Source: Botryllus schlosseri (Eukaryota). Taken from it: a stretch of 64,000 bases of DNA. Under the pieces are notes generated by a model that worked only from the letters and a program-made list of their open reading frames with translations, was not told where the DNA came from and searched no databases. The number at the start of each line of letters is the position of its first letter. Within the stretch, counting starts at the first letter, position 1. Shown here piece after piece: positions 16,617 to 48,650 of the stretch. The translations under genes were made by a program, and so were the position numbers. Location: NCBI GenBank assembly GCA_051294905.1, contig CM119374.1, positions 17,856,001 to 17,920,000 of the forward strand, given 5' to 3'.

Positions 16617-18874
16617 GCCATAAGACATGATAAATGACTTCACCTTTATTATAGGCCTATATAGGTAGGCTAATTCGCATATAGGCTACCAGGACTCAGC
16701 ATTCATTTTATCATCCAAGAAATACCCCAACGGAAGAAGAGTTAGAGGGAAATGTATAAAACTCAATTGTTGTCACCTCTAAACATAAATCATATAAAAT
16801 TATATGGTGGGATATATCTATTAAAAGTATGGAATAGTCGGCTTATCGACTGAAATCCTTGGATTTTCGTTCAAATAAAGGAGATGTATAGAGAAAGACT
16901 CGGTAGTCCAGAGAGCCCCTGGCGTCTTATTCTATGTTATGCAACATAGCCATGCGTTACGCACACCGTATAGTACAGTATACAACGTACAGTAACACCA
17001 TACTGTCATATATGACCAGTTGACCACGTAGGCCTACTTTGTGTGTTTTGTCCCAGTGGCGGCTCGTGACAATATCGGGTGGTGGGGCAAGGGCTGCGAG
17101 CGACTTTTATCAACATTTCGTCACAATGGCGTTTTCCAACGTAAAAAAGTAACTTTATGATGGTCACATGAATTTCCCGACAACAGTGATTTTAACGTAG
17201 GTGCCGCGAGAAGTTTGCCGGTGAGCCGTGACTTGAAGTGTGGTAACAAATGTTTTATTCATTTATTTTTAATCAAAGGATTATTTTACAAATTGTACGT
17301 GAACTAAGAATCGTCCCTATGCCACGAATCAAGTATCAGGTCATCCTTAGTAGCATGCGTTTTGATTTCATGGTAGAGTTATAGATTACGCAAATCGATA
17401 GACCCTAAAATCCGACCGTCACCCCAAATTCGAAATCCGGATCCAGTCCGGCCAGGTAAAAAAACATTGAAATCCTGCTCCTGCTCCTGAACCGGACTGT
17501 GGCCATCTCTGGTTACGACCAGGTGATAATAGGCAACCAAAGCGGAGGCACCCGGCGTACGATTGGATCGATAGACTGGACAACTTCTAGACCTCTCATT
17601 TTCGCTCTAAAGGCAACTGCGTAAACTACGTACGGAATAAAGATTAAATACGATTCATGTTCGCACTTGACTTGACCTGACTAATTCCAACGACTAGAAC
17701 TCGAGAGATTGCGTAAGCCTAACTGGAAAGGTCAACGAGTTCGGACACATACGCAATTGTTATCTCATAGATTGGGCCTGTCAATATGGGCTCGAAAGTC
17801 ACGTGACTTTTCAGCATAGCAACCACCGTCTGGGGCCAAGCGCGTTTCTGGTATCATCTTCTCTGCGACAGTAATGCATTTGTATGTCGCAATTTCTGCT
17901 ACTGCCCTGGTCTTTGCTGTCACATTTTGTGTTTGTGTTACAGGATTGATTTTTTTTTTCGTGCAGATAGATGACAATGTGTAGTATTCAATTAACATGA
18001 TGGAGTATAGAGCAGTTTAAGATAGCCTATGTCAAACAAGTAATTCCAAGGTTTAGTACTTTCATCTGGACCTACTAACTATTCATCGTATGGCTGCAGC
18101 ATTATTATGCTTCAAGTGTATACTTATCGACACCGAGACAGTGATCAGTCAACATCGGAGATTAGTAATATTGTAACATTACCGTACCGTGTTAAATTTG
18201 ATTTCAGATGGATTTGGTTAAGCTACTTTTACGATTTGCGAGTTCTTCAAAAATGATCCGAATCTGGTCAAAAGAAGTCAAAATGATTTAGACAACGACC
18301 ATCCAACATCAGCAATGTATGGTGGAGATGGCAGTGAATTGGGAAACAGTCAGTTCAGCCATGAGTATAATGAAAGTTTATGACGTGGAGGTTGGTAATT
18401 GCAAAATTACCTGAAAGATTGGGGAAGCGTTGGATTTGAGTTCGAATCCCACTTGACGCAAGTGGGTCGGAGCCTTATCTGGACTCCCCACTGCTTACCT
18501 AACTACATGAGCAGCGTCATGTAATCAAGCCCAGATGGCTAAGTAAAGCCAATGAGGCTCTAAAATCGGCATCACTGACGAGGACATATGAAAGCAAGCA
18601 AGAGAAGAAAGATGGTCAACGAATGGGTGACAGGAACTCAGAAAAAGCTTATCAAAAAGCAAAGAGACCCTTGAACTTGAAAGCATTTATTTTGTGGTGC
18701 AAACAGACGATCATCATCATCATTGGTTTATTACCAATTTTATCAGTTCGATACACCACAAAATGCGATACAATGAAAAGACAGGAAGATGTCGAAGCGA
18801 CTGGGAGTAGTATATGGAATCAGGACACTTATCTTGACCTAGGCGATGTAAAGAGGAGGCATGCACATGCACAC

Positions 18875-19542
18875 TAGGGCTTTTCAGAAATGACTTTTTT
18901 TCTCAAATCGTACTGGGACTACTGGCTACTTGATAAAATTGTTAGGGTTACTTAATTTAGGCCTACACACAAAATTTGGTTCAATTCCAGCCAGTAACCG
19001 CTTTGGTACAGAAGTAAGTTTCTATTTATTATTTTAAATAAATAATAAAAAATTCGAAAATTTTCTGTTCACCCCGTGAAAGTGTTAGGCTGTCTATAGA
19101 AACGATGCTCACCAAATTTGATTCAATCCCAACCAGCGGAAGCGGAATTATCGCCGTCGAAAAATTTGGATTTGAATAAAATAGTATTTACGGTGAGCAC
19201 AACTATAATAAATAAACAAAGAATCGGTCACCGTAAATACTATTTTATTCAAATCCAAACTTTTCGACGGCAATAACTCCGCTTCCACTAATTAGAATTG
19301 AACCAAATTTGGTGAGCATCGTTTCTATAGACAGCCTAACGCTTTTATGGGGTGAACAGAAAATTTTCAAAATTTTTATTATTTATTTTTCCATTATAAA
19401 TAGAAACTTTCTTCTCCTGTAGCAAAGCGGTTACTGGCTGGAATTGAACCAAATTTTGTGTGTAGGCTTTAATTAGGTAACCTAACAATTTTATCAAGTA
19501 GCCAGTACGATTTGAGAAAAAAGTCATTTTTGTAGAGCCCTA
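18875..19542. mobile_element. Almost fully palindromic hAT-type MITE (668 bp)
   Basis: Starts TAGGGC, ends GCCCTA; ~320-bp arms around a ~30-bp spacer near 19197-19227; perfect TSD ATGCACAC. Confidence 0.93.
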
Positions 19543-19791
19543 ATGCACACTGAATGAAAGTGAAGAAGATAGCATTTCCACCTTTTCAGAGTACTATGTA
19601 ATATTGCATACTTGCCGGAGTGTTATATTTTTTAAAGTAGTTTTAGGACATGTTTGCGGCACTTTTGTGATGTGTGTATTGATAGATATCAAGTGTCCCT
19701 ATTCTACCAAATCAAGATCATTAATAGACTTGAGCGTTTATGAAGAAAGTCTTCATTTTGAAATGAGTCGGTCATCGGTGATACTATAGTA

Positions 19792-20461
19792 CAGGGCCGG
19801 CCAACCCGTGGCCCGCGGGCCACATGTGGCCCGCGAGAAGGTTTTGAGTGGCCCGCGAAGTAATTTCCGAAATTTCTAATATCAAAAATGGATTGCATAG
19901 ATTGTGAAATTGCAAGGCAAACCAAAAATTTGATTAGTTTGGCCGCAACACTTGAGATGTGATGACTAGAATATCAGTTCCGACGCATTGACAGATCCAT
20001 CAGCCAGTCACATATTGGTATATCTTCGTACACTACAATAAAGCAGAATAATTTGCGATAGATTTATCAAAAGTAAAAATCTTCTGCAAGCTTAGCGCAA
20101 CATGTTGTCACTCGATTCCTTGTTTTTTAATATTGTTGCCCTTTTTGTGAAAATGGAAGAACGCCTGATGTATCAGATTGAGTCCAACTATATTCGCGAT
20201 TACGAGACAAAGTGTCGTTCAACATATGCGACCTGCGTTTGCGCTCGCAGTAAGATCGTTGGATATGGAACCTAGGGACGGAAAGGTTGACGCATGTTGG
20301 TCGCAGCTTTCGATACCGATATGTCCATGCGCCGAATAGCCCATTTCTCGCAAACTTAGCCCAGCGATATACGACAGGCTCGCAATATAGTCAAGTGACA
20401 ATATTATTGACCTATGAACAATCGAATGTGGCCCTTTGGCTGAAAAGGTTGGCCGGCCCTG
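19792..20461. mobile_element. hAT (Buster/Charlie-like) MITE, 670 bp
   Basis: TIR CAGGGCCGGCCAACC...GGTTGGCCGGCCCTG; perfect TSD CTATAGTA; GGCCCGCG subterminal motifs. Confidence 0.92.
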
Positions 20462-20869
20462 CTATAGTACTTGCCCAGCATCACAAGTACTTTGACAAGT
20501 GCAGGGCAGCTTGTGCACTGCATACTCAAAACTTATGCCATTTAATTGTTTTGGACCCGACGATTACCTCAAGATTCTGAATAGAAGAACTACCTAATTC
20601 TGATATTATAATATTTCCACAACAATACTTTCTTGATCTTGCATACTCTCGCTTGATTTTACAAAATTCTAAGAGTGCTGACGAAATCAATAACTGGCGA
20701 ATAAATTCGACAAATTCACAACTTGAGAATGTATTTCCTTTGTACCGAGAATGAAACAAATAGAATGTAGGTATTGGTCACAGATTAGGTATTCCTGATT
20801 AATGTTGCCAACTTACCATAGACGGATGCAATTTTGACTCAAGCTATACACTGCTACTGTGGAGGTAGT

Positions 20870-21560
20870 CTTAAACTGACGACTCACTTAAACACACAGA
20901 GTTGGCTTGAAAATGGGCAGCCATAAGCAATACAATTGATAGGACTGTGTTGGTATATTGAAATTGACGAGAATAACAGCAAGCAACATAACTGTGAGTA
21001 CTCCATGGGAATCTGTAGTTATTGCGTTTCTGCATCGCGTCGACGTAAGTATTTCCCATTGACAAGCCAAGATCCTGAACGGCGTTTGTGTAAATTTAGG
21101 GTGCTCTGGCCCTGAGAACGACGGTAAGGGATACCAGTGTTGTTGGGTCCGTATGGTTACGAGGCTGGTCTCACACAAATGACCTACTGGTGGCATTGGT
21201 GTACCATATGTCGACAACAATGTCAGTTCCTTCCCAGCGTTTTGGGTGGATTTCTTCCAAGTTCAGGAAGTATATGTGGTCCCGACTTTTAAGGCCGGAA
21301 GCGTCTCCAAGTGTTCGCTCCACCTCCCTACGGTGACGTCATTTTATAGACAGTTGAGCTGCATTTTCTCACCGTTCAAGGGGTAAATAGCGTGTGTGTG
21401 CTTCTCGTTCTTGCGATAAAGGAGATGGTGTCTTCTGGAGAGCAGTTTTTGGCAGAGATACCGATTGCATCATACAAAATGCCTGGATCAGAGATGCCCC
21501 GGATATGGTTTACATATAGCGCACAGTGCAACTTCACTAGCACAGCAATCAGGTACAGAT
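20870..21560 (-). pseudogene. Ty3/Gypsy integrase C-terminal remnant
   Basis: Frameshifted minus-strand reading RWSEHLETLPALKVGDHIYFLN...HPKRWEGTDIVVDI...LVTIRTQQH resembles the recalled Gypsy integrase tail (RWSEHT..L..L.VGD.V.IQN..P.RW..TG.VV..R.T.RNR). Boundaries approximate. Confidence 0.55.
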
Positions 21561-22019
21561 TAGTGAGACTAGCATCAATGTTTGCATTGATTTGTTAAAC
21601 ATCTGAAAGTAGGTATCTATAAAGAGAATAAAATGGTTATGAATTAGCCTACCCTCTGATTTTTGTTCAAGAAATTTGTGTAAATTTTGTATAGGGCAAT
21701 GCAAAAGCTACTGAAGGTAGAAAATTTTAAATTTGGCTAAACTAGCCCAATTTGTTATACATTTTTTTGAAAACTCAACCATTTCATGGCGTAGCCAGTA
21801 AAATTCTATAAAACTATTTTATTTTTTCAATAATTTTTTTTTTGAAGAATCTGATAACTTCACTTCTGCATGTTGGAATTGAGCCAAATCTAGTGTGCAA
21901 CCTTTCTTCGAGCCAACCTAACAATTTTGTTCATGAGACAGTGAAATTTGAAAAAAAAGTTGTTTTTGAACAACATTGATGTATAGAAACTTGATCAAAA
22001 TTTAAAAAAAAACATTGGC

Positions 22020-22690
22020 TACAGTGCCAGTACTAAATTATACGAAGTAGTGTCACGAGTAACAGCAAGACCTGGTCTTCCATTAAAAGAATCTTTACAT
22101 TCCAGAGTTAGAATGATACCAAATTTTAAATCACTGCATCATCACAAAAACCAAGTCGAAAGTACGGTACTCTTGTCCTTGTCCGGCAATAGCAGTCTTC
22201 TCAGCACTATCCTTGAAACAATCAATAACTTCCTTCTGATTGGCATGGTTCAACATAAATTTGGCTGACCGAAATTCTTGATTATCTTTTTCGATAAATG
22301 GCACAGATATCTTAATAGCTAACCGGTGCCTGCAGTTGATGCATCTATTCTTAGGACAATTTTACTATATAAACACTTTAATAAAAATCTAATAATTGTG
22401 GGTTATCTTAAATCATTTGCTATTGAAGCTGACTTGATTACGCTGTCTTGGGGCACACAAAATACCGGTGTGACATTTGATACCACCAAACAAACAAGTC
22501 AACATAGATCAAATGTTAATTATATTTATCATTCTATCTAGCCTTATTAATTTCAGTCACCTTCCTGTCGTTTTCTGGCAATTTAGAAGTCGATGGAAAG
22601 ACTATTCCGAATTGTTTTCTCATCCATTATAACAAATTGGCACGTTATACCCTGGCATTTTGCGCGGCTGCAAAACAACATAAACCTACC
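22020..22690 (-). pseudogene. THAP-domain transposase N-terminal remnant
   Basis: Minus-strand MPGYNVPICYNG*ENNSE*SFHRLLNC...*LKLIR resembles a decayed THAP zinc finger; position fits the transposase of the 17769-29343 element. Confidence 0.4.
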
Positions 22691-23104
22691 TAGTTGGTGT
22701 CTAAAAGTCCTGAAACTAGCTAATAAGTCATAGAAGATAACATAAAACCCAGAACTGTACTTCAAACAACCTCACTGAGACAGAAAATACGATTTGAAAA
22801 CAGACCAATAACGCAAATTAACCACTGTGATTCTAATAGAATTCTCGGGAATTATATATGTTCATGTGAAACACAAAAAATAGCAGGGGCATCATGGTAT
22901 TTTTCAGTTTATAATTTTTACCGGAATTCCAAAAACCACTTGCCAGATTTTACAATATTTATTTTGTGACAGGTTATCGGGATACCTGATCAAGAATGCG
23001 ACTCAATCAGTAAACACAGGTGCCCAACTGTAACACAGATTTGCAATAAAAATGGTTTGAAATAACTTAGGAATAGGAACAGACCAGAATCACAACCAGC
23101 TCAA

Positions 23105-25165
23105 TGAAATATCGCGTTGATCAATACATAGACACACTTGAATTTCCGACAAAATCGATACATATATAATTGAAGAATTACCCATGTTGGGACCCTAAAG
23201 AAAGATATTCAACCGCATCAGTGGACGTAAGTACCCCTAATAAAAAATTATTGACGATCATTAAGCTTCGGAATGACAAAGGAACAGAACAGAATCCGAA
23301 TGAATTCGGTGGAATATCACCTCGTTCAATACTTAGACACACTTGAATTACCGACAAAATCGATACATATATAATTGGAGAATTACCCATGTTGGGACCC
23401 TAGAGGAAGATATTCAACCGCATCAGTGGACGTAAGTACCCCTAATAAAGAATTACTGACGATCATTAAGCTTTGGAATGACAAAGGAACAGAACAGAAT
23501 TCGAATGAATTCGGTGGAATATCACCTCGTTCAATACATAAACACACTTGAAATCCCGACGAAATCGATACATATATAATTGAAGAATTACCCATGCTGG
23601 GACCCTAAAGGAAGATATTCAACCCCATCAGTGGACGTAAGTACCCCTAATGAAGAGTTATTGACAAACAATAAGCTTCGGAATAACTCAGGAACAGAAC
23701 AGAATCCAATCGAATTCGGTGGAATATCGCGTCGTTCAATTCAAAGATACACTTGAATTTCTGACAAAATCGGCACATATATAATTGAAGAATTACCCAT
23801 GCTGGGACCCTGAAGGAAGATATTCAACCCCATCAGTGGACGTAAGTACCCCTAATGAAGAGTTATTGACAAACAATAAGCTTCGGAATAACTCAGGAAC
23901 AGAACAGAATCCAATCGAATTCGTTGGAATATCGCGTCGTTCAATCCAAAGATACACTTGAATTTCTGACAAAATCGGCACATATATAATTGAAGAATTA
24001 CCCATGCTGGGACCCTAAAGGAAGATATTCAACCCCATCAGTGGACGTAAGTACCCCTAATAAAGAATTATTGACGATCATTAAGCTTCGGAATGACAAA
24101 GGAACAGAACAGAATTCGAATGAATTCGGTGGAATATCACCTCGTTCAATACTTAGACACACTTGAATTACCGACAAAATCGATACATATATAATTGGAG
24201 AATTACCCATGTTGGGACTCTAGAGGAAGATATTCAACCCCATCAGTGGACGTAAGTACCCCTAATGAAGAGTTATTGACAAACAATAAGCTTCGGAATA
24301 ACTCAGGAACAGAACAGAATCCAATCGAATTCGGTGGAATATCGCGTCGTTCAATCCAAAGATACACTTGAATTTCTGACAAAATCGGCACATATATAAT
24401 TGAAGAATTACCCATGCTGGGACCCTAAAGGAAGATATTCAACCCCATCAGTGGACGTAAGTACCCGTAATAAAGAATTATTGACGATCATTAAGCTTCG
24501 GAATGACAAAGGAACAGAACAGAATTCGAATGAATTCGGTGGAATATCACCTCGTTCAATACATAAACACACTTGAAATCCCGACGAAATCGATACATAT
24601 ATAATTGAAGAATTACCCATGCTGGGACTCTAAAGGAAGATATTCAACCCCATCAGGGGACGTAAGTACCCCTAATGAAGAGTTATTGACAAACAATAAG
24701 CTTCGGAATAACTCAGGAACAGAACAGAATCCAATCGAATTCGGTGGAATATCGCGTCGTTCAATCCAAAGATACACTTGAATTTCTGACAAAATCGGCA
24801 CATATATAATTGAAGAATTACCCATGCTGGGACCCTAAAGGAAGATATTCAACCCCATCAGTGGACGTAAGTACCCCTAATGAAGAGTTATTGACAAACA
24901 ATAAGCTTCGGAATAACTCAGGAACAGAACAGAATCCAATCGAATTCGGTGGAATATCGCGTCGTTTAATCCATAGATACACTTGAATTTCTGACAAAAT
25001 CGGCACATATATAATTAAAGAATTACCCATGTTGGGACCCTAAAGGACGATGTTCAACCCTATCAGTGGACGTAAGTACCCCTAATAAAGAATTATTGAC
25101 GATCATCAAGCTTCGGAATTACTCAGGAGCAGAACAGAATCCGATCGAATTCGGTGGAATATCCC
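23105..25165 (+). repeat. Tandem array of ~10 x 205-bp units (left arm)
   Basis: AATTACCCATG recurs every 205 bp (about 23177-25022); the ORF track repeats at 205-bp spacing. Confidence 0.97.
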
Positions 25166-25415
25166 GTTAGTCAATATAATAATACTTCAAGTTACTCCTA
25201 CACCGTGATATGTACAATTCATTTATGTTGTTGTACATGATAACTAACCAAATTGGCGCCGGCTTTGCATCGAACACAATTTCCTTTTTAAAACAGTTCC
25301 AAGAATATATAGTCTACTAGTTAGAGTATAGCGAAAAGTAACGATATAGCGTGTGAAATTGTGTTTTCAAATGTATAGGTGGAGGGGGGTATATTCAGTT
25401 TATTTTCGTCTACTC

Positions 25416-25784
25416 CAGTGGTTCCCAACGTGGGCGATTTGGCGGTCTAGGGGGGTGAAAATGACGAAGAGGGCGATAGGGGGGCGAAAATGGGAAAATG
25501 GACAAAGGGGGCGACAGGGCGAGAAAATAACGAAGGAGGAGATAGGGGTGCGATGACGCGTCAAAACGGATGACCTTTTTTTTCTTCATTTAGTCAACCC
25601 ACGGTAATTTCGTTACAAAAGTGTGTCAAATTAGACATCGAGCCGAAAATTTGACCTTTTTTTAGTCAACCCGCCGGTGATTACAGTTTGTATGCCCAAT
25701 TTTCGGTAAACAAAATTTGGGGGGCGATGATCGGTGTTGACCTTGAAAAGGGGGCGATGGGTCGAAAAAGGTTGGGAACCACTG
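25416..25784. mobile_element. hAT (Buster-like) MITE inside the foldback spacer
   Basis: TIR CAGTGGTTCCCAAC...GTTGGGAACCACTG; perfect TSD GTCTACTC. Confidence 0.93.
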
Positions 25785-26048
25785 GTCTACTCCTTCGGTA
25801 TAATTTACCAATGTAGATGAGCAGGCACCGTTGGTTGGATCACTAGACACCATTCTATCTAGGATTTCAGAAAACTTTGAAATATAGTCGCTCTTATGAT
25901 CAAGTATAGTGCGGCGCGGATGGACAACTACTCTGATATCTTGTCTTTTCAATTCGCTGGCCCTACTTCGGTCCAACTCTAAGGTCGGATTCTTGAAATG
26001 ACCGTGATCCTGTCGTAAAACCCCGATATTATTCATTTACTCACACGG

Positions 26049-26240
26049 CAGTGTTGGGATCAGGTCACTACCTTCGAGTCACGAGTCATCTCGAGTCATT
26101 GCACATTTTGACTCGAGTCAAATTAAGTCAATCGATTTTCGAAGGTGACTTTAGTCAAGTCAAGTCACTCATTTTTTGGAGGTGGCTTGAGTCGAATCAA
26201 GTCGAATCAAGTTAAGTCACGAGAAAAGTCGCAATTCAAC
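26049..26240. mobile_element. Fragment of a GACTCGAGTC-rich MITE family
   Basis: Starts CAGTGTTGGG; dense GAGTC/GACTC repeats as in other copies in the window. Right end not found. Confidence 0.6.
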
Positions 26241-26929
26241 TCAAATTGAATTTTCGAAGTATGAGTGATAATTCATAGTCATTAGCATCACTCGTTGCGT
26301 GAAAGACAGCTAGATTAATTGAATTAAATTTGATTGAATCAAACAACGAATATAAATTTAAATACCTGAGTAACCGTGTAGCTGAATGCTACAGTCTGGT
26401 AGTATCAGCAGATCTAGGCAGTGGTTCTCAACCTTTTTGTCTCCGCGGACCCCCTTGAACCTGTCACAGACCCCCGCGGACCCCCAAGTTTTAGATCGGA
26501 TTTAGCTCGATTATCGAGTAACCGTTATCTGCCTTGCCTGCAAATATCGACCTTATGCTATAGGGATCAAGCAACCAGAATGCTAACATTCCCAACGGAT
26601 TGTCTGATAGCATGCAAGGTTATAGTTGTTGAAGAGAGATTTCTAAAATATGAAATCTGAAGTTTTAAGCAGAACAATAACTACCAATGGCATGTATATC
26701 GCGCGAAGCGTTCAAAAAATTTCAGTTCAGTGCAGCTTTGCGCCCCACTTCAGATGCTTTCACCTATCCTAGTTTGAGAACCAAAACAGATGAATGTGGA
26801 GGATTGCAAATACTACGATATCACCGTACTCGAATTTGCACAGCCCTAGTGATATCATACTTTGACAGAGCGACGCGTTCTCTCTTAAATTCTGCTGATC
26901 ATGTGGTAATTGAACGAGAGGACGCGCGT

Positions 26930-28960
26930 ACGTTCTGTTCCTTTGTCATTCCGAAGCTTGATGATCGTAATTAATTTTTTATTAGGGGTACTTACGTCCA
27001 CTGATGGGGTTGAATATCTTCCTTTAGGGTCCCAAAAGGGGTAATTCTTTAATTATATATGTGCCGCTTTTGTCAGAAATTCAAGTGTATCTATGGATTG
27101 AACGACGCGATATTCCACCGAATTCGATTGGATTCTGTTCTGTTCCTGAGTTATTCCGAAGCTTAATGATCGTCGATAATTCTTTATTAGAGGTACTTAC
27201 GTCCACTGATGGGGTTGAACATCTTCCTTTAGGGTCCCAAAAGGGGTAATTCTTTAATTATATATGTGCCGCTTTTGTCAGAAATTCAAGTGTATCTATG
27301 GATTGAACGACGCGATATTCCACCGAATTCGATTGGATTCTGTTCTGTTCCTGAGTTATTCCGAAGCTTAGTGATCGTCAATAATTCTTTATTAGGGGTA
27401 CTTACGTCCACTGATGGGGTTGAATATCTTCATTTAGGGTCCCAGCATGGGTAATTCTTCAATTATATATGTATCGATTTCGTCGGAAATTCCAGTGTGT
27501 CTATGTATTAAACGAGGCGATATTCCACCGAATTCATTCGTATTCTGTTCTGTTCCTTTGTCATTCCGAAGCTTAATGATCGTCAATAATTCTTTATTAG
27601 GGGTACTTACGTCCACTGATGGGGTTGAATATCTTCCTTTAAAGTCCCAGCATGGGTAATTCTTCAATTATATATGTATCGATTTCGTCGGAAATTCCAG
27701 TGTGTCTATGTATTGAACGAGGCGATATTCCACCGAATTCATTCGGATTCTGTTCTGTTCCTTTGTCATTCCGTAGCTTAATGATCATCAATAATTCTTT
27801 ATGAGGGGTACTTACGTCCACTGATGGGGTTGAATATCTTCCTTTAGGGTCCCAGCATGGGTAATTCTTCAATTATGTATGTATCGATTTCGTCGGAAAT
27901 TCAAGTGTGTCTATGTATTGAACGAGGCGATATTCCACCGAATTCATTCGGATTCTGTTCTGTTCCTTTGTCATTCCGAAGCTTAATGATCGTCAATAAT
28001 TCATTATGAGGGGTACTTACGTCCACTGATGGGGTTGAATATCTTCCTTTAAAGTCCCAGCATGGGTAATTCTTCAATTATATATGTATCGATTTCGTCG
28101 GAAATTCCAGTGTGTCTATGTATTGAACGAGGCGATATTCCACCGAATTCATTCGGATTCTGTTCTGTTCCTTTGTCATTCCGTAGCTTAATGATCATCA
28201 ATAATTCTTTATGAGGGGTACTTACGTCCACTGATGGGGTTGAATATCTTCCTTTAGGGTCCCAACATGGGTAATTCTTTAATTATATATGTGCCGATTT
28301 TGTCAGAAATTCAAGTGTATCTATGGATTGAACGACGCGATATTCCACCGAATTCGATTGGATTCTGTTCTGTTCCTGAGTTATTCCGAAGCTCATTGTT
28401 TGTCGATATTTCTTTCATAAGGTCACTTACGTCCACTGATGGGGCTGAATATCTTCCTTTAGGGTCCCAACATGAGTAATTCTTTAATTATATATGTGCC
28501 GATTTTGTCAGAAATTCAAGTGTATCTATGGATTGAACGACGCGATATTCCATCGAATTCGATTGGATTCTGTTCTGTTCCTGAGTTATTCCGAAGCTTA
28601 TTGTTTGTCAATATTTCTTTCATAAGGTCACTTACGTCCACTGATGCGGTTGAATATCTTCCTTTAGGGTCCCAACATGGGTAATTCTTTAATTATATAT
28701 GTGCCGATTTTGTCAGAAATTCAAGTGTATCTATGGATTGAACGACGCGATATTCCGCCGAATTCGATTGGATTCTGTTCTGTTCCTGAGTTATTCCGAA
28801 GCTTATTGTTTGTCAATATTTCTTTTATAAGGTCACTTACGTCCACTGATGGGGTTGAATATCTTCCTTTAGGGTCCCAACATGGGTAATTCTTTAATTA
28901 TATATGTGTCGATTTTGTCGAAAATACAATTATATCTATATATTGAACAACGTGATATTT
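26930..28960 (-). repeat. Tandem array of ~10 x 205-bp units (right arm, inverted)
   Basis: CATGGGTAATT-type motif recurs every 205 bp (about 27036-28881); reverse complement of the left-arm unit. Confidence 0.97.
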
Positions 28961-30024
28961 CATCGTATTGGTGGTGATTCCGGTCTGTTCGTATTCCTGA
29001 GATATTTCAAACCATTTTTATTGTAAATTTGTTTTATAGTTGGGTACCTGTGTCTACCGATTCAGTCGCATTCTTGATCAGATATCCCTTTAACCTGTCA
29101 CAAAAAGCTATTGTAAAATCTGGCAAGTGGTTTTTGGAATTCTGGTAAAAATTCCTAACTGAAAAATATCATGATGTCCGCGCTGTTTTTTGTGCTTTAC
29201 CTGAACATATATAATTCCCGAGAATTCTATTAGAATCACAGTGGTGCAAATTAACACAGGGAGCGCCTATCTAATATAGTTGTTTGGCCCCAGCGAACCA
29301 CAAGTCACGTGACTTTCGAGCCCAAATTGAATCCAGAACATCAATTTGAATGGTCTTTGAAGAACTAAGGACAGCAGCCTCGGAACTTCGGTCTCGGAAC
29401 AACGTAGGACATTTTGGCCTTGAAACTGGAGACTGTGACACAACACATACGGCTTACTGTCTATAAGTCTGCTGCGAAATCGCCGTTGGAAAATATATTA
29501 ATATATAAATACATGAATAAAAGCCGTAACTTAGTATACTGTTACAAGAAATCATCGACAAGTAGCATACGCAATCTCATAACCCATTCCGGTATGGTAC
29601 ACTGTCAAAATCAATGCAAACAGACGAACACCGAACTTTAAGTAAAATAGATCGAGGAATAGGCTGATCGAATGATCAGCTGTTAGCCGACATCGAAAAT
29701 GAAATAGCTATCGCAATTGACAGGGGATTGTAAGCAAATGGTTTGAAGGCCACAATTTCACAGTGAAATGGACATTGGCGAACATAAAATTATGCGAATA
29801 CTTGAATGCAAACCGAGAATCTTGGTTAGCTGTTTCATGCGATCATCGAGATATACCATTGGAAATATCATCACCGATCTCGTTATGGAACGCAGACTAT
29901 AGATTAGCACAGACCGACACCGGCTTTTGCGTGAGATCCGCAATGACGTAGGTAGGCTAAGTATCAGATCAGCGCGCATCTCTACCATACTCGACCTCGA
30001 AAACGAAATAACTGCCTCAATCAT

Positions 30025-30197
30025 TGAGTGTCAACTTTAAGACTTGGCACCGCGTTCGATACTAAAATCAAGACATACCGTGTGAAAGCTCATGACAGAT
30101 CTAGGTATGGAACATCGTTAAAATCAATAGAGATCAATAACGGCTTTTGCGTAAATTTGTTGGCGATAAATGAAGAGTCAGCTCTTACTCGACTTTG
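30025..30197 (+). repeat. 173-bp direct duplication, copy 1 (copy 2 at 33481-33653)
   Basis: Identical to 33481-33653 except one T/C difference (AGAGATCAAT vs AGAGACCAAT). Confidence 0.97.
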
Positions 30198-30283
30198 TTT
30201 TTACCAGCATTGTGCTCATACTCAATTTGGTCTAGTTGACTCTTTGGCTATCACCACTCAAAATTTATTATCCTGAACAAGCA

Positions 30284-31865
30284 ATGGCTGGCACTGCACG
30301 CGCTCCGAATTTCAGCATAGCTGAAAAAAATGGATTTATCGACTTGATTGGAAAATACCCCGTTTTGATTACCAGCAAAACTAGTGGACAGAGCGATAAG
30401 GATTTTAGAAGGAATAAAGAAGCGGCCTGGCGCAAACTTGTCAGTGAATTCAATTCATCAGGAATTGCACAAGTGGAGAGAAATGAGGACAAGTTGAAAA
30501 AACTCTGGAAAAATTTGAAGAGCGATTGTAAAAAGCATGAGGCGCAACGAGTACGGGAGCAAAGAAAAACTGGTGGTGGAATACCTGACCTTCAACCAAC
30601 TGCATCAGACATGATCTATGCCAAGATCAAAAGTAGGTGCTGCAGTAATCCATCATTCCTTGTGTAGACTACATAATAATTCAGGATTGTTTTTCACAGG
30701 TTTGATACCAAGTCAAATAAGTAGCATCCCCAGTCAATTTGATGATGATTCAATATCAGTACAAGTGCAACAAGAGTCATATGCAGGCTGCGAAACACAA
30801 ATGGAGGCGCCATCTTTCAGCACCACAGAAAATGTAGCAGGCATAGAACTGCCATGCTCTGAAATAGGTCTATATATATCTGTATATACACTTGAATGGT
30901 GATAACATGATCTAATACGATTTATCTTTAGGTTCTTCTGAAACTTCTATGGTCGAACTTTTTTCCGTTCCGACACTGAACCGTAAGTATACAATACAAT
31001 TTCTATTCACTGCTTGAGAATTTACTGGATATTTTCTGATAGATCCTAGTTCACCTGATCTGTCAACGTCTGGGGTTGCAGTTGGAACTTCAACTTCAAC
31101 TTCTACTTGCTCCGTCATGAACAATCCACTACCAAATCAAGGTAAATTCGCATTCATTTCTGATTTAACCATTGTCTATTTCTGGGATGGCCGGACATTT
31201 GTGCGGCCGTCGACACGTAATTCAATTAGTATGTGCTTGCGGCCGTCAACATGCAAATTGAATTTCGGAATTGAGAGATTTTAATTATTCTTGAAATTTT
31301 CAATTCGGCTTCATTTTTCAACTACAATATAGTAATTGAATTATGCAATCTGATCCCCAGAATATAGTAGCCTACAGATGCGAGCAGCAGAGGAAAATAA
31401 TTCAGAATAGATTCACTTGAATTTTTCCAAATAAGCATCAGGGATCTTGACCACTATAATTATGAAAACCCGCTTTACTTGCCAAAGCATGATAAAATCA
31501 CTTTTCGCAGACCAGGAACGGACTTGAAAAGTGCTGGTCTACGGACCAGAGGTTGCCGCCCCTGCTATCAACTGCGGAATTTTGGACATATTGCAGCAAT
31601 ATAAATATCAACATTTTTTTTAAACTCATGGTATTTATCATTTTCATCTTTCCAAACAGCTCGCTCTAAGCCTAAGGCCACCTATGAAGAAATGAGGTTG
31701 GATGTACTAAACGCTAAATTGGAGGAGAGCAAGGCTAAAAAAAGACTCCTGGAAAAGGATTTGGAAATGAGAGTTACGGAGACGAGAATGAGACAAATTG
31801 AGCATGATCTCAAAGTGAATCATTATAAAAAAAAGTCCGAGATGCTGGACAAAAAGTATCAGTGA
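30284..31865 (+). CDS. Harbinger Myb/SANT-like DNA-binding protein, 5 exons, ~290 aa
   Basis: Exons 30284-30632, 30700-30867, 30932-30982, 31043-31141, 31660-31865 (873 nt, open, GT-AG). Motifs RAPNFSIAEK, KEAAWRKL, KLKKLWKNLK, KTGGG and a C-terminal coiled coil. Confidence 0.88.
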
Positions 31866-32191
31866 ATTTTTGCTCACTGAATCCAGTGTCTGAACCAATT
31901 TTCTGTATACTTCGTTCAATTTCGTTGACACGCCATTCTTTTCTTGCCGAGGTTTTCCACACTGCTCATGCTATCCTGTATTGCAATTTATAAAATTGCT
32001 TCCACCGTTTTTCTACACCGCTTAAGCGCTTATGCTATCCTGCTATACTGTTTTATGCTATCCTGCTATACTGTGTTAAACTTACTATCAGCCGCTATGC
32101 GAATTTTCATTTTTACATGACACACGCAATAAAGCTCATGTTTGTTTCTTTGTAATTGAAATGGAATGTGTAGAAAAAGAATATTCATGGA

Positions 32192-33253
32192 TTAGTTTGA
32201 AAAGTGTCTCAAAATTATGCTTTGTCGCTCGGATTGTCCAGAAGGAGTCGATGCGACATGAGGGTGGTCTGAAGCATCTGGTTCGAATACGTCATCAACT
32301 TCCGTTTCATCAGTCATCTGTCGTGTCCGAATTGCCAGATTATGAAGGCAGGTTATGGCCACAACGATATTCGTGGAATTGCTGAGCTTGGTCCTCATCG
32401 GTATAGCTAAGGCGAAAAATCTTTTTTTCAGCATGCCAAAGCACTGCTCTATGCGAGAGCGGGTTACAATATGAGCGTGATTATACTTTTTTTCGGCCGA
32501 TGTTCTTGGTGATAATAGTGGTGTAAGTAAGTAGCTCCTCAGTGGATATCCATTATCCCCAAGCAAATATCCATCGATTTGATTATCTTCGAATCGATCA
32601 CGGATCACCGAATTGTCAAAGATTCTTGAATCGTGACAAGATCCATACCAACGTGTGACAATGTTTGTTACGACTCGCTGTGCATCACATATCATTTGAA
32701 CGTTCAATGAAAAATAACCTTTTCTGTTCCGGAACACCTCTGCATTATCACCGCCAGGGGATATTATGGGTAGATGAGTACAATCGATTGCTCCAACAAC
32801 GTTTGGGAAGCCTGCAATGTCATAAAATTCTTGCTTTACTTTGGTGAGGTCAGTAGGAAAATTCAAAAACAGGAGCTTCTTGCGGCATATGGCACGGGTA
32901 ATTTTGTGAATGCTTCTGTGAGCAGTTACTTTGCTTATACCAGCTAGGTCACCATCAGTCTGTTGAAAATGGCCATCCGCGAAAAACCGTAAGGCGCAAG
33001 TTAGTTGTAGTATTGGCGGAAGAGCATGATCTCTGCAGGTCAATTCTTCATCATCTTTCAACAGCCCAAAAAGATAGTGAGTTGCGTCTTTTGAAAACCG
33101 GAATCGCAGTCTGAACTCGTTGTTCGAATACCTTTCGAAGGGGTTCTGAACATCTGCGAGATACTTTCTTGGCAGTCTGTACTGTTCATCATCATCGTCA
33201 GTAAATTCCAACAACTCCAGCAATTCCATAATCCTCCACTGATCTCCTTTCAT
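32192..33253 (-). CDS. HARBI1-like Harbinger transposase (DDE_Tnp_4), 353 aa, intact
   Basis: GAIDCTH, NRKGYFSLNVQ, GSCHDSRIF, YLLGDNGY and RSRIEQCFGMLK motifs give a complete D-D-E triad. Confidence 0.95.
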   Translation of the reverse strand: MKGDQWRIMELLELLEFTDDDDEQYRLPRKYLADVQNPFERYSNNEFRLRFRFSKDATHYLFGLLKDDEELTCRDHALPPILQLTCALRFFADGHFQQTDGDLAGISKVTAHRSIHKITRAICRKKLLFLNFPTDLTKVKQEFYDIAGFPNVVGAIDCTHLPIISPGGDNAEVFRNRKGYFSLNVQMICDAQRVVTNIVTRWYGSCHDSRIFDNSVIRDRFEDNQIDGYLLGDNGYPLRSYLLTPLLSPRTSAEKKYNHAHIVTRSRIEQCFGMLKKRFFALAIPMRTKLSNSTNIVVAITCLHNLAIRTRQMTDETEVDDVFEPDASDHPHVASTPSGQSERQSIILRHFSN

Positions 33254-33480
33254 TCATCCACGAGCAACTCAAAACAATAACAATCTGGCCTCGGTTCCGT
33301 GTTGAACTCGCTACAGCGACGAAGTAGACAGTAATTACTCGCAACTAACGGACTTGGCCGAGCGCGGCGCCAAATTGACATTTGAAACCGAATTAAGACC
33401 GCCGTCGCCTGGCGTCTCGGCCAAGTCATTCACTGGCCTTAAGCCAGGTCTAAATTAAGACAACTTTTTGAAACCCACCC

Positions 33481-33653
33481 TGAGTGTCAACTTTAAGACT
33501 TGGCACCGCGTTCGATACTAAAATCAAGACATACCGTGTGAAAGCTCATGACAGATCTAGGTATGGAACATCGTTAAAATCAATAGAGACCAATAACGGC
33601 TTTTGCGTAAATTTGTTGGCGATAAATGAAGAGTCAGCTCTTACTCGACTTTG
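33481..33653 (+). repeat. 173-bp direct duplication, copy 2
   Basis: Begins with TGA immediately after the Harbinger right end. Confidence 0.97.
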
Positions 33654-35110
33654 GAAACGAAATTACCACCCACATAGTTCAGTGACAAACTTAAAACTTG
33701 TTACATCGGTCGATACTAACACTTACCGTGCCAAATGTCATGACCGATCTCGGTATAGAACATCGTCAAAATCAATGGAGACCAATACCGGCTTTTGAGT
33801 AAAATCCGTTTGCTGTACTATGTACATGATAGATCAGCACACACTGAACTTCGGAAACGGAATTACTACCATTATCTTTAAGTAGCAAGCCTGAAACTTG
33901 GAGCAGTGTTAAATACTACCTTCACGACATATCATACCAAGTTTCAAGAATTATCATGGTGCGAAACACCGTCAAAATCGACCTATACCAGCAAAGGTCG
34001 ACTCAACGCATATTACGGTAACCGAGTTCAGATATAGATACGATTGTTACATCACACCTTAGGGGCGAGTAGGCATATTTGCCCCGGTTGCTCGGCCATT
34101 TTACGAATAGGAGAGAGTAAATCACCGTTTCTATATTGTGCGCGGCTTTGAGAGAATAGATAGTGAAAGCTTGTTATGAGCGCTACCGGGGCAAGCCCCG
34201 GCTAGGCATTCACAAAGCGAAAACACAGAAGAGAATTCGATTTTCGCAGAGACTTCGCTATGTATGGGCGTTTGCAAGCGAAAGCACAAGAACGCGGGTT
34301 TCGCTGTGATCTCGGTATATATTGATTGCTGTGCGTCTATAAATGGTTAAATTGTTATTGAACAGAATTTTAGGTGGGGCAATGCCCCAGTTGCCCTATA
34401 GGACGAGCCGCCACTGTTTTGTCCTATATAATAACGTGTGCAACTGTGCATGTGCAATTGTGCATTCATAAATACCTCATGGGACCACCCATTTCGCTAT
34501 CATACTGAATCTTAATTCTACAAATGCATAATTCCCGAGTAAAACCGTCGTTGAAGAAGTATTGTGTATAATATACGTTAACCTGTCAGGAAAGAACTTA
34601 CGCGAGGCCGGTAAGAAGAAACTTGCAAATGTATTAAATTCATAATTCCTAAGAACTACAATAAATGTCTGACCCCAAAGCTTGGTTCGCCTCGCAGCAT
34701 ACAGTTCCCCTGTAGCAATTTCAGGAAGAACAGAAATTAGAATAAAATGGAGCATTAGAAAAAAATCATCTAGCTGTCCTATTCTGGTAGGATGATCGTC
34801 TTGGCGACTGTTCGAAAAAGATAGTATCCTTTTCAAACCGGAAAATGGGCCACGGCCCAACAAAGGTCGGGAACCCCTGTCGTACGCTGACTAACTTGAC
34901 CTATCCAGCAAATATAACGCAGGCTTGGACGAGCACGTGATTTATTAAAAATCGTCACAACAGTCCACGCGGCGGACCGTGACGATTACGACCGGAAAAC
35001 TGTCGCGTTAGTTCCGTTGTTAATGTTTCGGGTAAACTCGTCATGTCGACGCAGAAAGTGATGTCTTCACCAGCACTACAGTAGCAGGCCGGCACACAGA
35101 CCATGTGTCG

Positions 35111-47759: not shown

Positions 47760-48650
47760 ATGAGCGAGCCCGGGGAATTACGACACAAGTCCGATTCGTC
47801 AGACTATCACCAGCGTAGCTGCTGGGTGTGTTTCGGCACTGACGAAGACGGGGATATGAATTCCGCCTGGGTGAAACCCTGCCGATGCAAGGGAACCACC
47901 ATGTGGGTGCACCACACCTGTCTCATGCGGTGGATTGACGAAAAGCAAAAAGGACATTCCTTCAACAAAGTCAACTGCCCGCAGTGTAACACCGAATACG
48001 TCATCGTGTTCCCTCCGTTTGGGAAGCTTGCGAAAGCTATCCAATACATTGACCATTTGGTGTATAAAGCATCACCGATTGCCGCCACTGGTGTGCTTTT
48101 GGGTTCTCTGTACTGGAGCGCGGTCACGTACGGAGCCATCACTGTAATGCAAGTGTTAGGTCACAAAGAAGGACTAGATATGATGGAGCGGGCCGATCCC
48201 TTGTTTTTACTTGTGGGCCTTCCCATGATCCCGGTTGTTTTGATTCTGGGTAAAATGATACAGTGGGACGATCATCTCCTGAAATTTTACAACAGGCACG
48301 TTCACAAGTTGTACGCGCTTAAAACTTTTTTCTCGGGCAGTACGATGCCCAGGTCGATTCAAACCATTTTGCCGCCCGTCCCAGTCCAAGCTCGACAAAC
48401 TAGGGAGATAAAATTCACAAGGGTCCTGTGCGGCGCTTTGATATTTCCAACTGTAGCCACGCTATTCGGAAAGCTGTTATTTCACAGCGTCAAGTCCAAT
48501 TTGCGCCGTAGCGTTTTAGGGGGTATGTCATTCGTATTCCTGAAGGGGATCTTTAATATCTACTTGAAATTTCAAGTGCAGAGCAAGCTCGGGCAAAGGC
48601 AGATTAAAGATTATATCGCCGAGGATGATGATGATTCTGATGACCCATGA
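47760..48650 (+). CDS. MARCHF5: Mitochondrial RING-CH E3 ubiquitin ligase MARCH5/MITOL, single coding exon, 296 aa
   Basis: RSCWVCFGTDED...WVKPCRCKGTTMWVHHTCLMRWIDEKQKG...CPQCNTEY, followed by YWSAVTYGAITVMQVLGHKEGL, ADPLFLLVGLP, TRVLCGALIFPT and SVLGG transmembrane blocks. Confidence 0.97.
   Translation: MSEPGELRHKSDSSDYHQRSCWVCFGTDEDGDMNSAWVKPCRCKGTTMWVHHTCLMRWIDEKQKGHSFNKVNCPQCNTEYVIVFPPFGKLAKAIQYIDHLVYKASPIAATGVLLGSLYWSAVTYGAITVMQVLGHKEGLDMMERADPLFLLVGLPMIPVVLILGKMIQWDDHLLKFYNRHVHKLYALKTFFSGSTMPRSIQTILPPVPVQARQTREIKFTRVLCGALIFPTVATLFGKLLFHSVKSNLRRSVLGGMSFVFLKGIFNIYLKFQVQSKLGQRQIKDYIAEDDDDSDDP

What the first reader, a model, noticed from the sequence alone, without database searches (positions are those of the whole stretch)
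22821..29245. Foldback element whose arms are inverted 205-bp satellite arrays
Seen: 44-bp perfect termini, an 8-bp TSD GCAAATTA, ~300 bp of decayed unit-like sequence, then about ten 205-bp monomers per arm in opposite orientation around a 1.8-kb non-coding spacer. The element can form a ~2.3-kb stem. Established: foldback elements (Drosophila FB, Galileo, Tetris; some MULEs) have modular TIRs and can seed satellite DNA and rearrangements. The ACCACTGTG terminus with an 8-bp TSD does not match a superfamily I can name. An alternative reading is ends CCACTGTG (22822-29244) with a 10-bp TSD and one mismatch, which would be MULE-like. The monomer is about one nucleosome repeat long.
Basis: partly seen in the sequence, partly recalled or inferred. 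Interest (0 to 1): 0.8.

Follow-up and report, generated by a model that had tools for sequence, protein, structure and literature searches.

The report
Foldback transposon with satellite-array arms
This is a real 6.4-kb non-coding "foldback" jumping gene whose two inverted arms each carry about ten copies of a 205-bp repeat; it is well preserved, but the layout is already known from flies and beetles and recurs elsewhere in this genome.

Summary
Window 22821-29245 is a 6425-bp element with perfect 44-bp inverted tips and an 8-bp duplication, GCAAATTA. Its two arms (2315 and 2314 nt, 91% complementary) each hold about 10 units of a 205-bp tandem repeat. A 1796-bp middle domain has no coding capacity.

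It is not an assembly artefact. The arms differ by 9% and carry two monomer types in different order. Independent read sets hold the left arm/spacer junction and the spacer. Contigs from two related organisms follow the left flank and leave exactly at the insertion point. The terminus exists in many sequence variants, so this is a multi-copy family.

The best reading is a non-autonomous foldback-type cut-and-paste DNA transposon. It compares with Tetris, Galileo and the Rehavkus/FB elements that carry satellite arms.

The superfamily stays open. No transposase is present. The only symmetric perfect duplication is 8 bp, but the flanking direct repeat is really 10 bp, so a Mutator-type 9-10 bp duplication is not excluded.

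One added detail: all 18 monomers have their closest relative in the same arm, which shows arm-specific concerted evolution.

This scan noted similar satellite-armed foldbacks on other DNA of this genome, which those notes call an ascidian. Verdict: a new member of a known kind, of modest interest.

The parts
22813..22820 (.). Left copy of the target-site duplication, GCAAATTA. The direct repeat runs on to 22822.
   Evidence: read directly from the sequence.
22821..22864 (+). Left 44-bp tip, the perfect terminal inverted repeat. It starts ACCACTGTG and contains the 7-nt palindrome CACTGTG.
   Evidence: 2 matches in the window, 0 in shuffles; 0 mismatches in 44 nt against 11 in the next 56.
22821..23074 (+). 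Left terminal (flanking) domain, 254 bp. The inner ~85 bp are a degenerate partial monomer.
23075..25167 (+). Left array of 10.2 units of 205 bp. Two monomer types occur, in the order 1 1 2 2 1 2 1 2 2 from outside in.
25136..26931 (.). Middle domain (spacer) of 1796 bp, non-coding. About 680 bp are family-specific; the rest is nested MITE sequence.
   Evidence: depth and loose ends.
25416..25784 (.). Nested very high-copy MITE of hAT type, with TIR CAGTGGTTCCCAAC and a perfect 8-bp duplication GTCTACTC at 25408-25415 and 25785-25792.
   Evidence: I2, D8; depth.
26049..26789 (.). Two further nested high-copy repeats. One starts at 26049 (CAGTGTTGGGATCAGG, with an internal 37-bp tandem repeat). 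The other is a MITE from 26419 (CAGTGGTTCTCAACC) with a decayed right end near 26783-26789.
   Evidence: loose ends at 26048/26049 and 26419 with low agreement.
26932..28959 (-). Right array of 9.9 units of 205 bp, in inverted orientation. The monomer types run 2 2 2 1 1 1 1 2 2 from outside in.
28993..29245 (-). Right terminal domain of 253 bp, 89% identical to the left one.
29202..29245 (-). Right 44-bp tip.
29246..29253 (.). Right copy of the target-site duplication, GCAAATTA. The direct repeat runs on to 29255.

Best explanation
This is a non-autonomous foldback-type class II (cut-and-paste) transposon.

**Shown:** it sits as an insertion inside another repeat, bounded by perfect 44-bp inverted tips and a target-site duplication. 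Each arm consists of a 254-bp terminal domain followed by about ten 205-bp tandem units. The middle domain encodes nothing and has itself been colonised by very abundant hAT-type MITEs.

**Inferred:**
- A transposase encoded elsewhere in the genome binds the conserved tips, and possibly repeated sites in the arrays. It excises the element and reinserts it with a staggered cut of 8 bp.
- The arrays grow and homogenise within each arm by local duplication (steps of 2 units, 410 bp) and by gene conversion.
- The sharp contrast between a perfect tip and 13% divergence just inside it means the two arms were already unlike when this copy last transposed.
For: - **Anatomy:**
- **Tip conservation:** 0 mismatches in 44 nt, then 11 in the next 56. 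The chance that none of those 11 falls in the first 44 positions is 0.0017. The whole 210-nt non-array remainder has 28 mismatches.
- **Insertion boundary:** a 933-nt contig of run X27 and a 1115-nt contig of run X30 align to the left flank 22403-22822 and then run on unlike. An empty site ...GCAAATTA-ACACAG would end at exactly that position.
- **Multi-copy family:** 26 distinct contigs of run X1 cover position 22881 with the other letter. Depth over the terminus is several times that of the spacer-specific stretches. Organism D holds an 88%-identical copy of 22962-23317.
- **Independent support for the structure:** an X27 contig spans the left arm/spacer junction at 25116-25438 with 6 differences. 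X8 contigs cover 25222-25438, 25766-26066 and 26227-26442 with 1-3 differences.
- **Not a palindromic read artefact:** the arms are 9% apart and carry the two monomer types in different order. All 18 monomers have their nearest neighbour in the same arm (97-100%, against 93-95% across arms).
- **No coding capacity:**
- **Known parallels:** Tetris (PMC4079207), Galileo (PMC3573991 and PMC3688188), Rehavkus elements with satellite arms (PMC12581902). Subterminal repeats raise binding and excision in Muta1 (PMC5499845).
Against: - No second copy could be read base by base, so neither the duplication length nor mobility is shown from several insertions.
- The contigs that look like an empty site differ from the flank by about 3.8%. 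They are probably other copies of the host repeat, not the same locus without the element. Their continuation could not be compared with the right flank.
- No autonomous partner was found, and none of the three transposase-bearing elements in the window has matching ends.
- The right spacer/arm junction and the unit number are not confirmed by independent reads.
- The one motif shared by tip and monomer (AATTATATATGT, inverted) is weak: 14 of 500 shuffles score as high.
Confidence: 0.85

Rival explanations
1. It is specifically a Mutator-superfamily foldback of the Rehavkus / FB-NOF type. Its partner would be one of the satellite-armed Mutator-type elements that other notes report in this genome, and the true duplication would be 9-10 bp.
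For: - The direct repeat at the ends is 10 bp, GCAAATTAAC. That allows perfect 9- or 10-bp duplications if the tips are offset by 1-2 nt.
- MULE duplications are 8-11 bp, and Spectre and Muta1 give 8 or 8-9 bp.
- Most foldback elements are assigned to Mutator (Tetris paper).
- Other notes of this scan, unchecked here, report Rehavkus/NOF elements with 195-bp satellite arms in this genome.
Against: - Rehavkus gives 9 bp, and no symmetric 9-bp solution exists here.
- The symmetric 10-bp reading needs a mismatch.
- No transposase, PHD or Ulp1 remnant lies in the middle domain.
- The ends could not be compared with those elements.
Confidence: 0.35
2. It is a non-autonomous member of a superfamily that makes 8-bp duplications and is not Mutator: P (as Galileo is), hAT, Merlin, or a rarer one such as Zisupton.
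For: - The only perfect, symmetric duplication is 8 bp.
- Galileo (P superfamily) has the same layout, including tandem repeats of about 210 bp inside the arms and terminal segments of about 40 bp conserved between families.
- A Merlin element with repeat-filled arms is noted in this genome (unchecked).
Against: - Galileo gives 7 bp.
- The tip ACCAC... does not fit the hAT end consensus as I recall it.
- One insertion cannot fix the duplication length, and no transposase is available.
Confidence: 0.45
3. It is not mobile. A local inverted duplication of a pre-existing 205-bp tandem array would have produced the structure, and the flanking 8-bp repeat would be chance.
For: Only one copy was read in full. 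The arms are old enough (9% apart) for a local origin.
Against: - An exact 8-10-bp direct repeat lies precisely at the boundary of a perfect 44-bp inverted tip.
- The tip is far better conserved than the adjacent sequence.
- The terminus is present in many variants and in another organism.
- Flank-only contigs end at the boundary.
Confidence: 0.03
4. The palindromic arrangement or the equal unit number (10 and 10) is an assembly artefact.
For: Long palindromes and tandem arrays are hard to assemble. The short contigs laid here cannot count units. Arms equal to within 1 nt despite independent turnover are a little surprising.
Against: - Chimeric foldback reads give identical arms with no spacer. 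Here the arms differ by 9%, carry the monomer types in different order, and enclose a 1.8-kb spacer.
- The spacer's junctions recur in independent samples.
Confidence: 0.05

Closest known systems
Tetris, foldback transposon of Drosophila virilis (PMC4079207)
   Same: The layout is almost the same: a terminal flanking domain, then tandem repeats of about 220 bp, then an inner domain in each arm. The middle domain is non-coding and variable. Duplications are 8-9 bp in complete copies. No transposase has been found. Part of the terminal domain resembles the repeat unit.
   Different: There is no sequence relationship, and the host is a marine animal (an ascidian according to other notes). Tetris repeats are also known as an emerging stand-alone satellite, which was not shown here.
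Galileo, P-superfamily foldback-like element of Drosophila (PMC3573991, PMC3688188)
   Same: The arms are long and internally repetitive, with tandem units of about 210 bp in the F group. Unit number changes independently in the two arms. Terminal segments of about 40 bp are conserved. Extra transposase (THAP) binding sites lie in the tandem repeats.
   Different: Galileo gives 7-bp duplications, and its complete copies encode a P-type transposase. Here the duplication is 8 bp (or 9-10) and no coding copy is known. The arrays are also much longer here, 10 units against 1-4.
Rehavkus / FB-NOF foldback elements of the Mutator superfamily, including Rehavkus elements whose inverted termini are satellite arrays in Tribolium (PMC12581902, PMC6446971)
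   Same: [quoted passage not shown] The repeats evolve in concert. Other notes of this scan report such elements in this genome.
   Different: Rehavkus gives 9-bp duplications and encodes a transposase with a PHD finger. Neither is seen here, and membership could not be tested.
Muta1, Mutator-like foldback element of Aedes aegypti (PMC5499845)
   Same: It gives 8- or 9-bp duplications, has a short palindromic terminal motif, and has subterminal tandem repeats that strengthen transposase binding and raise excision. That is the mechanism I infer for the arrays here.
   Different: The Muta1 repeats are 12 bp in a 145-bp TIR, against 205-bp units in 2.3-kb arms here. Muta1 is autonomous.

Membership tests
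Foldback-type transposons (a structural class: FB, Tetris, Galileo-like) | Long inverted arms made largely of tandem subrepeats, able to fold back. | tested here: met
Foldback-type transposons (a structural class) | Conserved terminal inverted tips flanked by a target-site duplication. | tested here: met
Foldback-type transposons (a structural class) | Dispersed multi-copy family with different flanks. | tested here: inconclusive
   One search shows many contig variants and raised depth over the terminus, plus a diverged copy in organism D. No second insertion site could be read. There is no other copy in the window.
Mutator superfamily (MULE, Rehavkus, FB-NOF) | Target-site duplication of 8-11 bp, 9 bp in Rehavkus. 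| tested here: inconclusive
   8 bp is perfect and symmetric. 9-10 bp is perfect only with tips offset by 1-2 nt. 10 bp symmetric needs 1 mismatch.
Mutator superfamily (MULE, Rehavkus, FB-NOF) | Mutator-type DDE transposase (with PHD finger and Ulp1 protease in Rehavkus/NOF), in this copy or in a partner with the same ends. | not testable with these tools
   This copy has no coding capacity, and the rest of the genome could not be searched.
P superfamily (Galileo-like) | Duplication of 7-8 bp and a THAP-domain P transposase in complete copies. | tested here: inconclusive
   An 8-bp duplication is compatible. The transposase cannot be tested.
hAT superfamily | 8-bp duplication together with short TIRs starting with the hAT end consensus (C/T)A(A/G)NG. 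The consensus is recalled from memory. | tested here: not met
   The duplication length fits, but the tip reads ACCACTGTG. By contrast, the nested MITEs and the outer host element start CAGTGG.
Satellite DNA in the strict sense | Long stand-alone tandem arrays outside the transposon. | tested here: inconclusive
   Summed contig depth over the arrays needs no more than a few hundred monomers, which element-borne arrays could supply. The depth is no copy number, and no stand-alone array was seen or excluded.

The most novel reading that the evidence does not exclude
The family may belong to a foldback lineage not yet described. It would have a true 8-bp duplication and a palindromic CACTGTG tip, and would be mobilised by a transposase that is neither Rehavkus/Mutator nor P. 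Its 205-bp units would be amplified inverted pseudo-termini that serve as extra transposase-binding sites and seed dispersed 205-bp arrays in ascidian genomes.
Probability: 0.12. Interest if true: 0.5.

Novelty: new member of a known kind. Interest (0 to 1): 0.3.

Why it matters
Foldback elements with satellite-built arms are a known route by which transposons create, carry and spread tandem repeats and provoke rearrangements. They are well documented in Drosophila and Tribolium. My searches of the open literature paired no paper on tunicates with foldback elements. If the other notes are right that this is an ascidian genome, this clean copy adds a chordate-side example.

It also shows arm-specific concerted evolution unusually clearly: two monomer types, all 18 nearest neighbours in the same arm, and yet arms equal in length. 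The copy gives a defined 44-bp tip and a 205-bp unit with which the whole family, its partner and any free-standing arrays can be found.

It does not open a new question.

Tried and rejected
- **Other copies in the window:** none. The tip search allowing 3 mismatches found only the two ends. BLAST of the terminal domain, flanks and spacer found only MITE fragments.
- **Other copies through protein databases:** I used ORFs that run through the monomer. Two homologue searches found no candidate, and ten exact look-ups found nothing.
- **JGI metagenome contigs:** one scan with the tip and one with a degenerate conserved monomer block both gave 0 hits.
- **Earlier findings by sequence:** blank. 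Searching by terminal-motif words failed.
- **Literature by sequence strings** of the tip and the monomer: nothing relevant.
- **Sea-urchin TU foldback elements:** I recall them as a possible parallel with 8-bp duplications, but could not find or open the papers. They are not used as evidence.
- **Structured RNA in the monomer** (hammerhead or tRNA-derived): no Rfam or tRNA match.
- **Transposase remnant in the spacer:** no Pfam hit for the 124-aa and 95-aa ORFs.
- **Partner among the window's own transposons:** the Harbinger at about 30-33.7 kb, the element at 53187-57224 and the outer hAT-like element all have unrelated ends.
- **Transib/RAG-like reading** of the CACTGTG heptamer: rejected, because no 5-bp duplication fits the flanks.
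Full report
**1. The observation**

- The 44-bp tip ACCACTGTGATTCTAATAGAATTCTCGGGAATTATATATGTTCA occurs exactly twice in the window, at 22821-22864 (+) and 29202-29245 (-). No shuffle gave a match.
- GCAAATTA lies directly outside both tips.
- Tandem Repeats Finder reports a 205-bp array at 23075-25167 (10.2 units) and its inverse at 26932-28959 (9.9 units).
- The longest in-register inverted repeat is 22962-25135 / 26932-29105 (2174 nt, 90%). The tips add 144 nt at 90%.
- A global alignment gives arms of 2315 and 2314 nt at 91% identity.
- The two arms can pair along their whole length as single strands: 2140 paired positions, about -2190 kcal/mol with DNA parameters.
- The 1796-nt middle domain has only short ORFs. 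The two longest, 124 and 95 aa, have no Pfam match. Nothing in the element matches Rfam or a tRNA.

**2. Two refinements**

- The non-array terminal domain is 254 bp. Only its inner ~85 bp align to the 3' part of the monomer (z 3.2 left, 6.3 right). The outer 170 bp do not (z -0.9 on the forward strand).
- The direct repeat at the ends is really 10 bp, GCAAATTAAC at 22813-22822 and 29246-29255, because the two bases after the right GCAAATTA happen to equal the first two bases of the element.
  - Perfect 9- or 10-bp duplications need tips offset by 1-2 nt.
  - 8 bp is the most economical reading, but one insertion cannot settle it. An empty site cannot settle it either, since all readings predict the same empty-site sequence.

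**3. Is it real, and is it an insertion?**

I laid Logan contigs of four runs on 22400-28399. X1 and X8 are two studies of organism A. X27 is organism C and X30 is organism D.
- **Spacer and junctions.** X8 contigs cover 25222-25438, 25766-26066, 26227-26442 and 26502-26688 with 0-3 differences. X27 has a 328-nt contig across the left arm/spacer junction (25116-25438, 6 differences), and contigs at 25764-25946 and 26590-26783 with 1 difference each. So the composite spacer and its left junction exist in independent samples.
- **Left flank.** A 933-nt contig of X27 and a 1115-nt contig of X30 align to 22403-22822 and then continue with unlike sequence. The end at 22822 is exactly what an empty site ...GCAAATTA-AC-ACAGG predicts. 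These contigs differ from the flank by about 3.8%, and the flank has raised depth. They are therefore most likely other copies of the repeat that hosts the element, not the same locus.
- **Terminus.** At 22881, 26 different X1 contigs carry the other letter, and similar counts hold at 22958, 23013 and 23022. Depth over the terminus is several times that of the spacer-specific stretches. X30 holds an 88%-identical copy of 22962-23317. The depths are sums of assembler word depths and cannot be turned into copy numbers.
- **Wider occurrence.** Marine and seawater metagenome runs also hold part of the element's words.
- **Against a palindromic assembly artefact.** The arms differ by 9% and differ in internal order (section 4). 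The unit number and the right spacer/arm junction remain unconfirmed by independent reads.

**4. The arms**

Cut in the TRF phase, the monomers look like mosaics of two half-types. Cut 139 nt later, they fall cleanly into two types about 87% alike.
- From the tip inward, the left arm reads 1 1 2 2 1 2 1 2 2 and the right arm 2 2 2 1 1 1 1 2 2.
- Every one of the 18 full units has its closest relative in the same arm (97-100%). The best match across arms is 93-95%, and mirror partners are never closest.
- Near-identical units two apart (L3 = L5 = L7 at 99.5%; R3 = R5 at 100%) point to duplication or conversion in 410-bp, two-unit steps.

So the arrays evolve in concert within each arm, as described for Galileo and for Rehavkus-borne satellites. 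That both arms nevertheless hold the same number of units is either chance, a sign that conversion rather than unequal exchange dominates, or selection for symmetric arms. I cannot tell which.

**5. The tip**

Between the arms there are 0 mismatches in the first 44 nt, 11 in the next 56, and 28 in the 210 nt of the remaining terminal domain.
- The chance that none of those 11 falls in the first 44 positions is 0.0017.
- A dead inserted copy is under no selection. The simplest reading is that the arms were already unlike when this copy last moved, and that only the 44-bp tip is constrained by the transposase.
- At the four sites where the two arms differ and the reads were listed, most contig depth carries the right-arm letter (73-95% in X1). 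The left subterminal domain of this copy is therefore the less typical one.
- The tip holds the 7-nt palindrome CACTGTG.
- A 12-mer of the tip (AATTATATATGT) recurs, inverted, in the best-conserved block of every monomer. However, 14 of 500 shuffles score as high, so this is only a lead for repeated binding sites.

**6. The middle domain and the surroundings**

- The spacer carries a MITE at 25416-25784 with TIR CAGTGGTTCCCAAC and a perfect 8-bp duplication GTCTACTC.
- It carries two more high-copy repeats, from 26049 and from 26419. Their boundaries show as loose ends with low agreement and very high depth in all four runs.
- About 680 bp of family-specific spacer remain.
- The foldback itself lies inside a 17.4-kb hAT-like shell, 17054-34416, with TIR CAGTGGCGGCTCGT and duplication TTTTGTCC.
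- None of the window's transposase-bearing elements has ends like the foldback.

**7. What it is and how it works**

Best explanation (0.85): a non-autonomous foldback-type cut-and-paste transposon mobilised in trans.
- **Shown:** the anatomy, the insertion boundary, the tip constraint, multi-copy status, lack of coding capacity, and arm-specific concerted evolution.
- **Inferred:** transposase binding at the tip; a role of the arrays as extra binding sites that raise excision, as shown for Muta1 subterminal repeats and for THAP sites in Galileo repeats; and hairpin formation.

The superfamily is open. My split is Mutator/Rehavkus-type about 0.35, an 8-bp family of another superfamily (P, Merlin, hAT or a rarer one) about 0.45, and the rest unassigned. 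hAT is disfavoured because the tip does not fit the hAT end consensus as I recall it.

**8. Comparison and novelty**

- Tetris of D. virilis has almost the same modular layout, 8-9-bp duplications and no known transposase.
- Galileo has tandem units of about 210 bp in its arms and conserved tips of about 40 bp.
- Rehavkus elements of Tribolium have satellite arrays as inverted termini.
- Other notes of this scan, which I did not test, report many satellite-armed foldbacks on other DNA of this genome. They call it an ascidian, and they include two elements with exact 8-bp duplications that may be relatives.
- My searches of the open literature paired no paper on tunicates with foldback elements.

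This is a new member of a known kind. Interest is 0.3.

Noticed in passing
window 17054-34416: A 17.4-kb hAT-like shell with a perfect 14-bp TIR (CAGTGGCGGCTCGT) and an 8-bp duplication (TTTTGTCC). It encloses the foldback and a Harbinger, so the foldback is a nested insertion.
   Followed up: partly
window 25416-25784, and 26049-26789: Extremely abundant hAT-type MITEs (TIRs CAGTGGTTCCCAAC and CAGTGGTTCTCAACC, resembling Charlie/MER5-type ends as I recall them). Summed word depth runs from 26,000 to over a million in the organism A runs, and these repeats are present in all four runs laid. Flanks of other copies of the 26419 MITE often read TCTAGA.
   Followed up: partly
window 30025-33653: A Harbinger-type element with a Myb/SANT ORF (30236-30667) and a DDE_Tnp_4 transposase ORF (32192-33253). 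It is bracketed by a 173-bp direct repeat at 99.4% identity (30025-30197 and 33481-33653).
   Followed up: partly
window 53187-57224: An element with long inverted ends (TAGGGTCAGATCATGTCAAGTGATCC...) and ORFs of 256 and 599 aa. The 599-aa ORF has no Pfam match. Its ends are unrelated to the foldback.
   Followed up: no
window 47760-48650: An intronless 296-aa ORF with a RING-variant (MARCH-type) domain. It may be a host gene.
   Followed up: no
window 22403-22820 (left flank): The flank is itself repeated. In run X27 its contig has about 7-10 times the depth of the spacer-specific contigs, and contigs about 3.8% different are present in organisms C and D.
   Followed up: partly
window 22821-29245: Marine and seawater metagenome runs hold 9-10% of the element's sampled words, presumably from DNA of this animal or of relatives in the water.
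   Followed up: no
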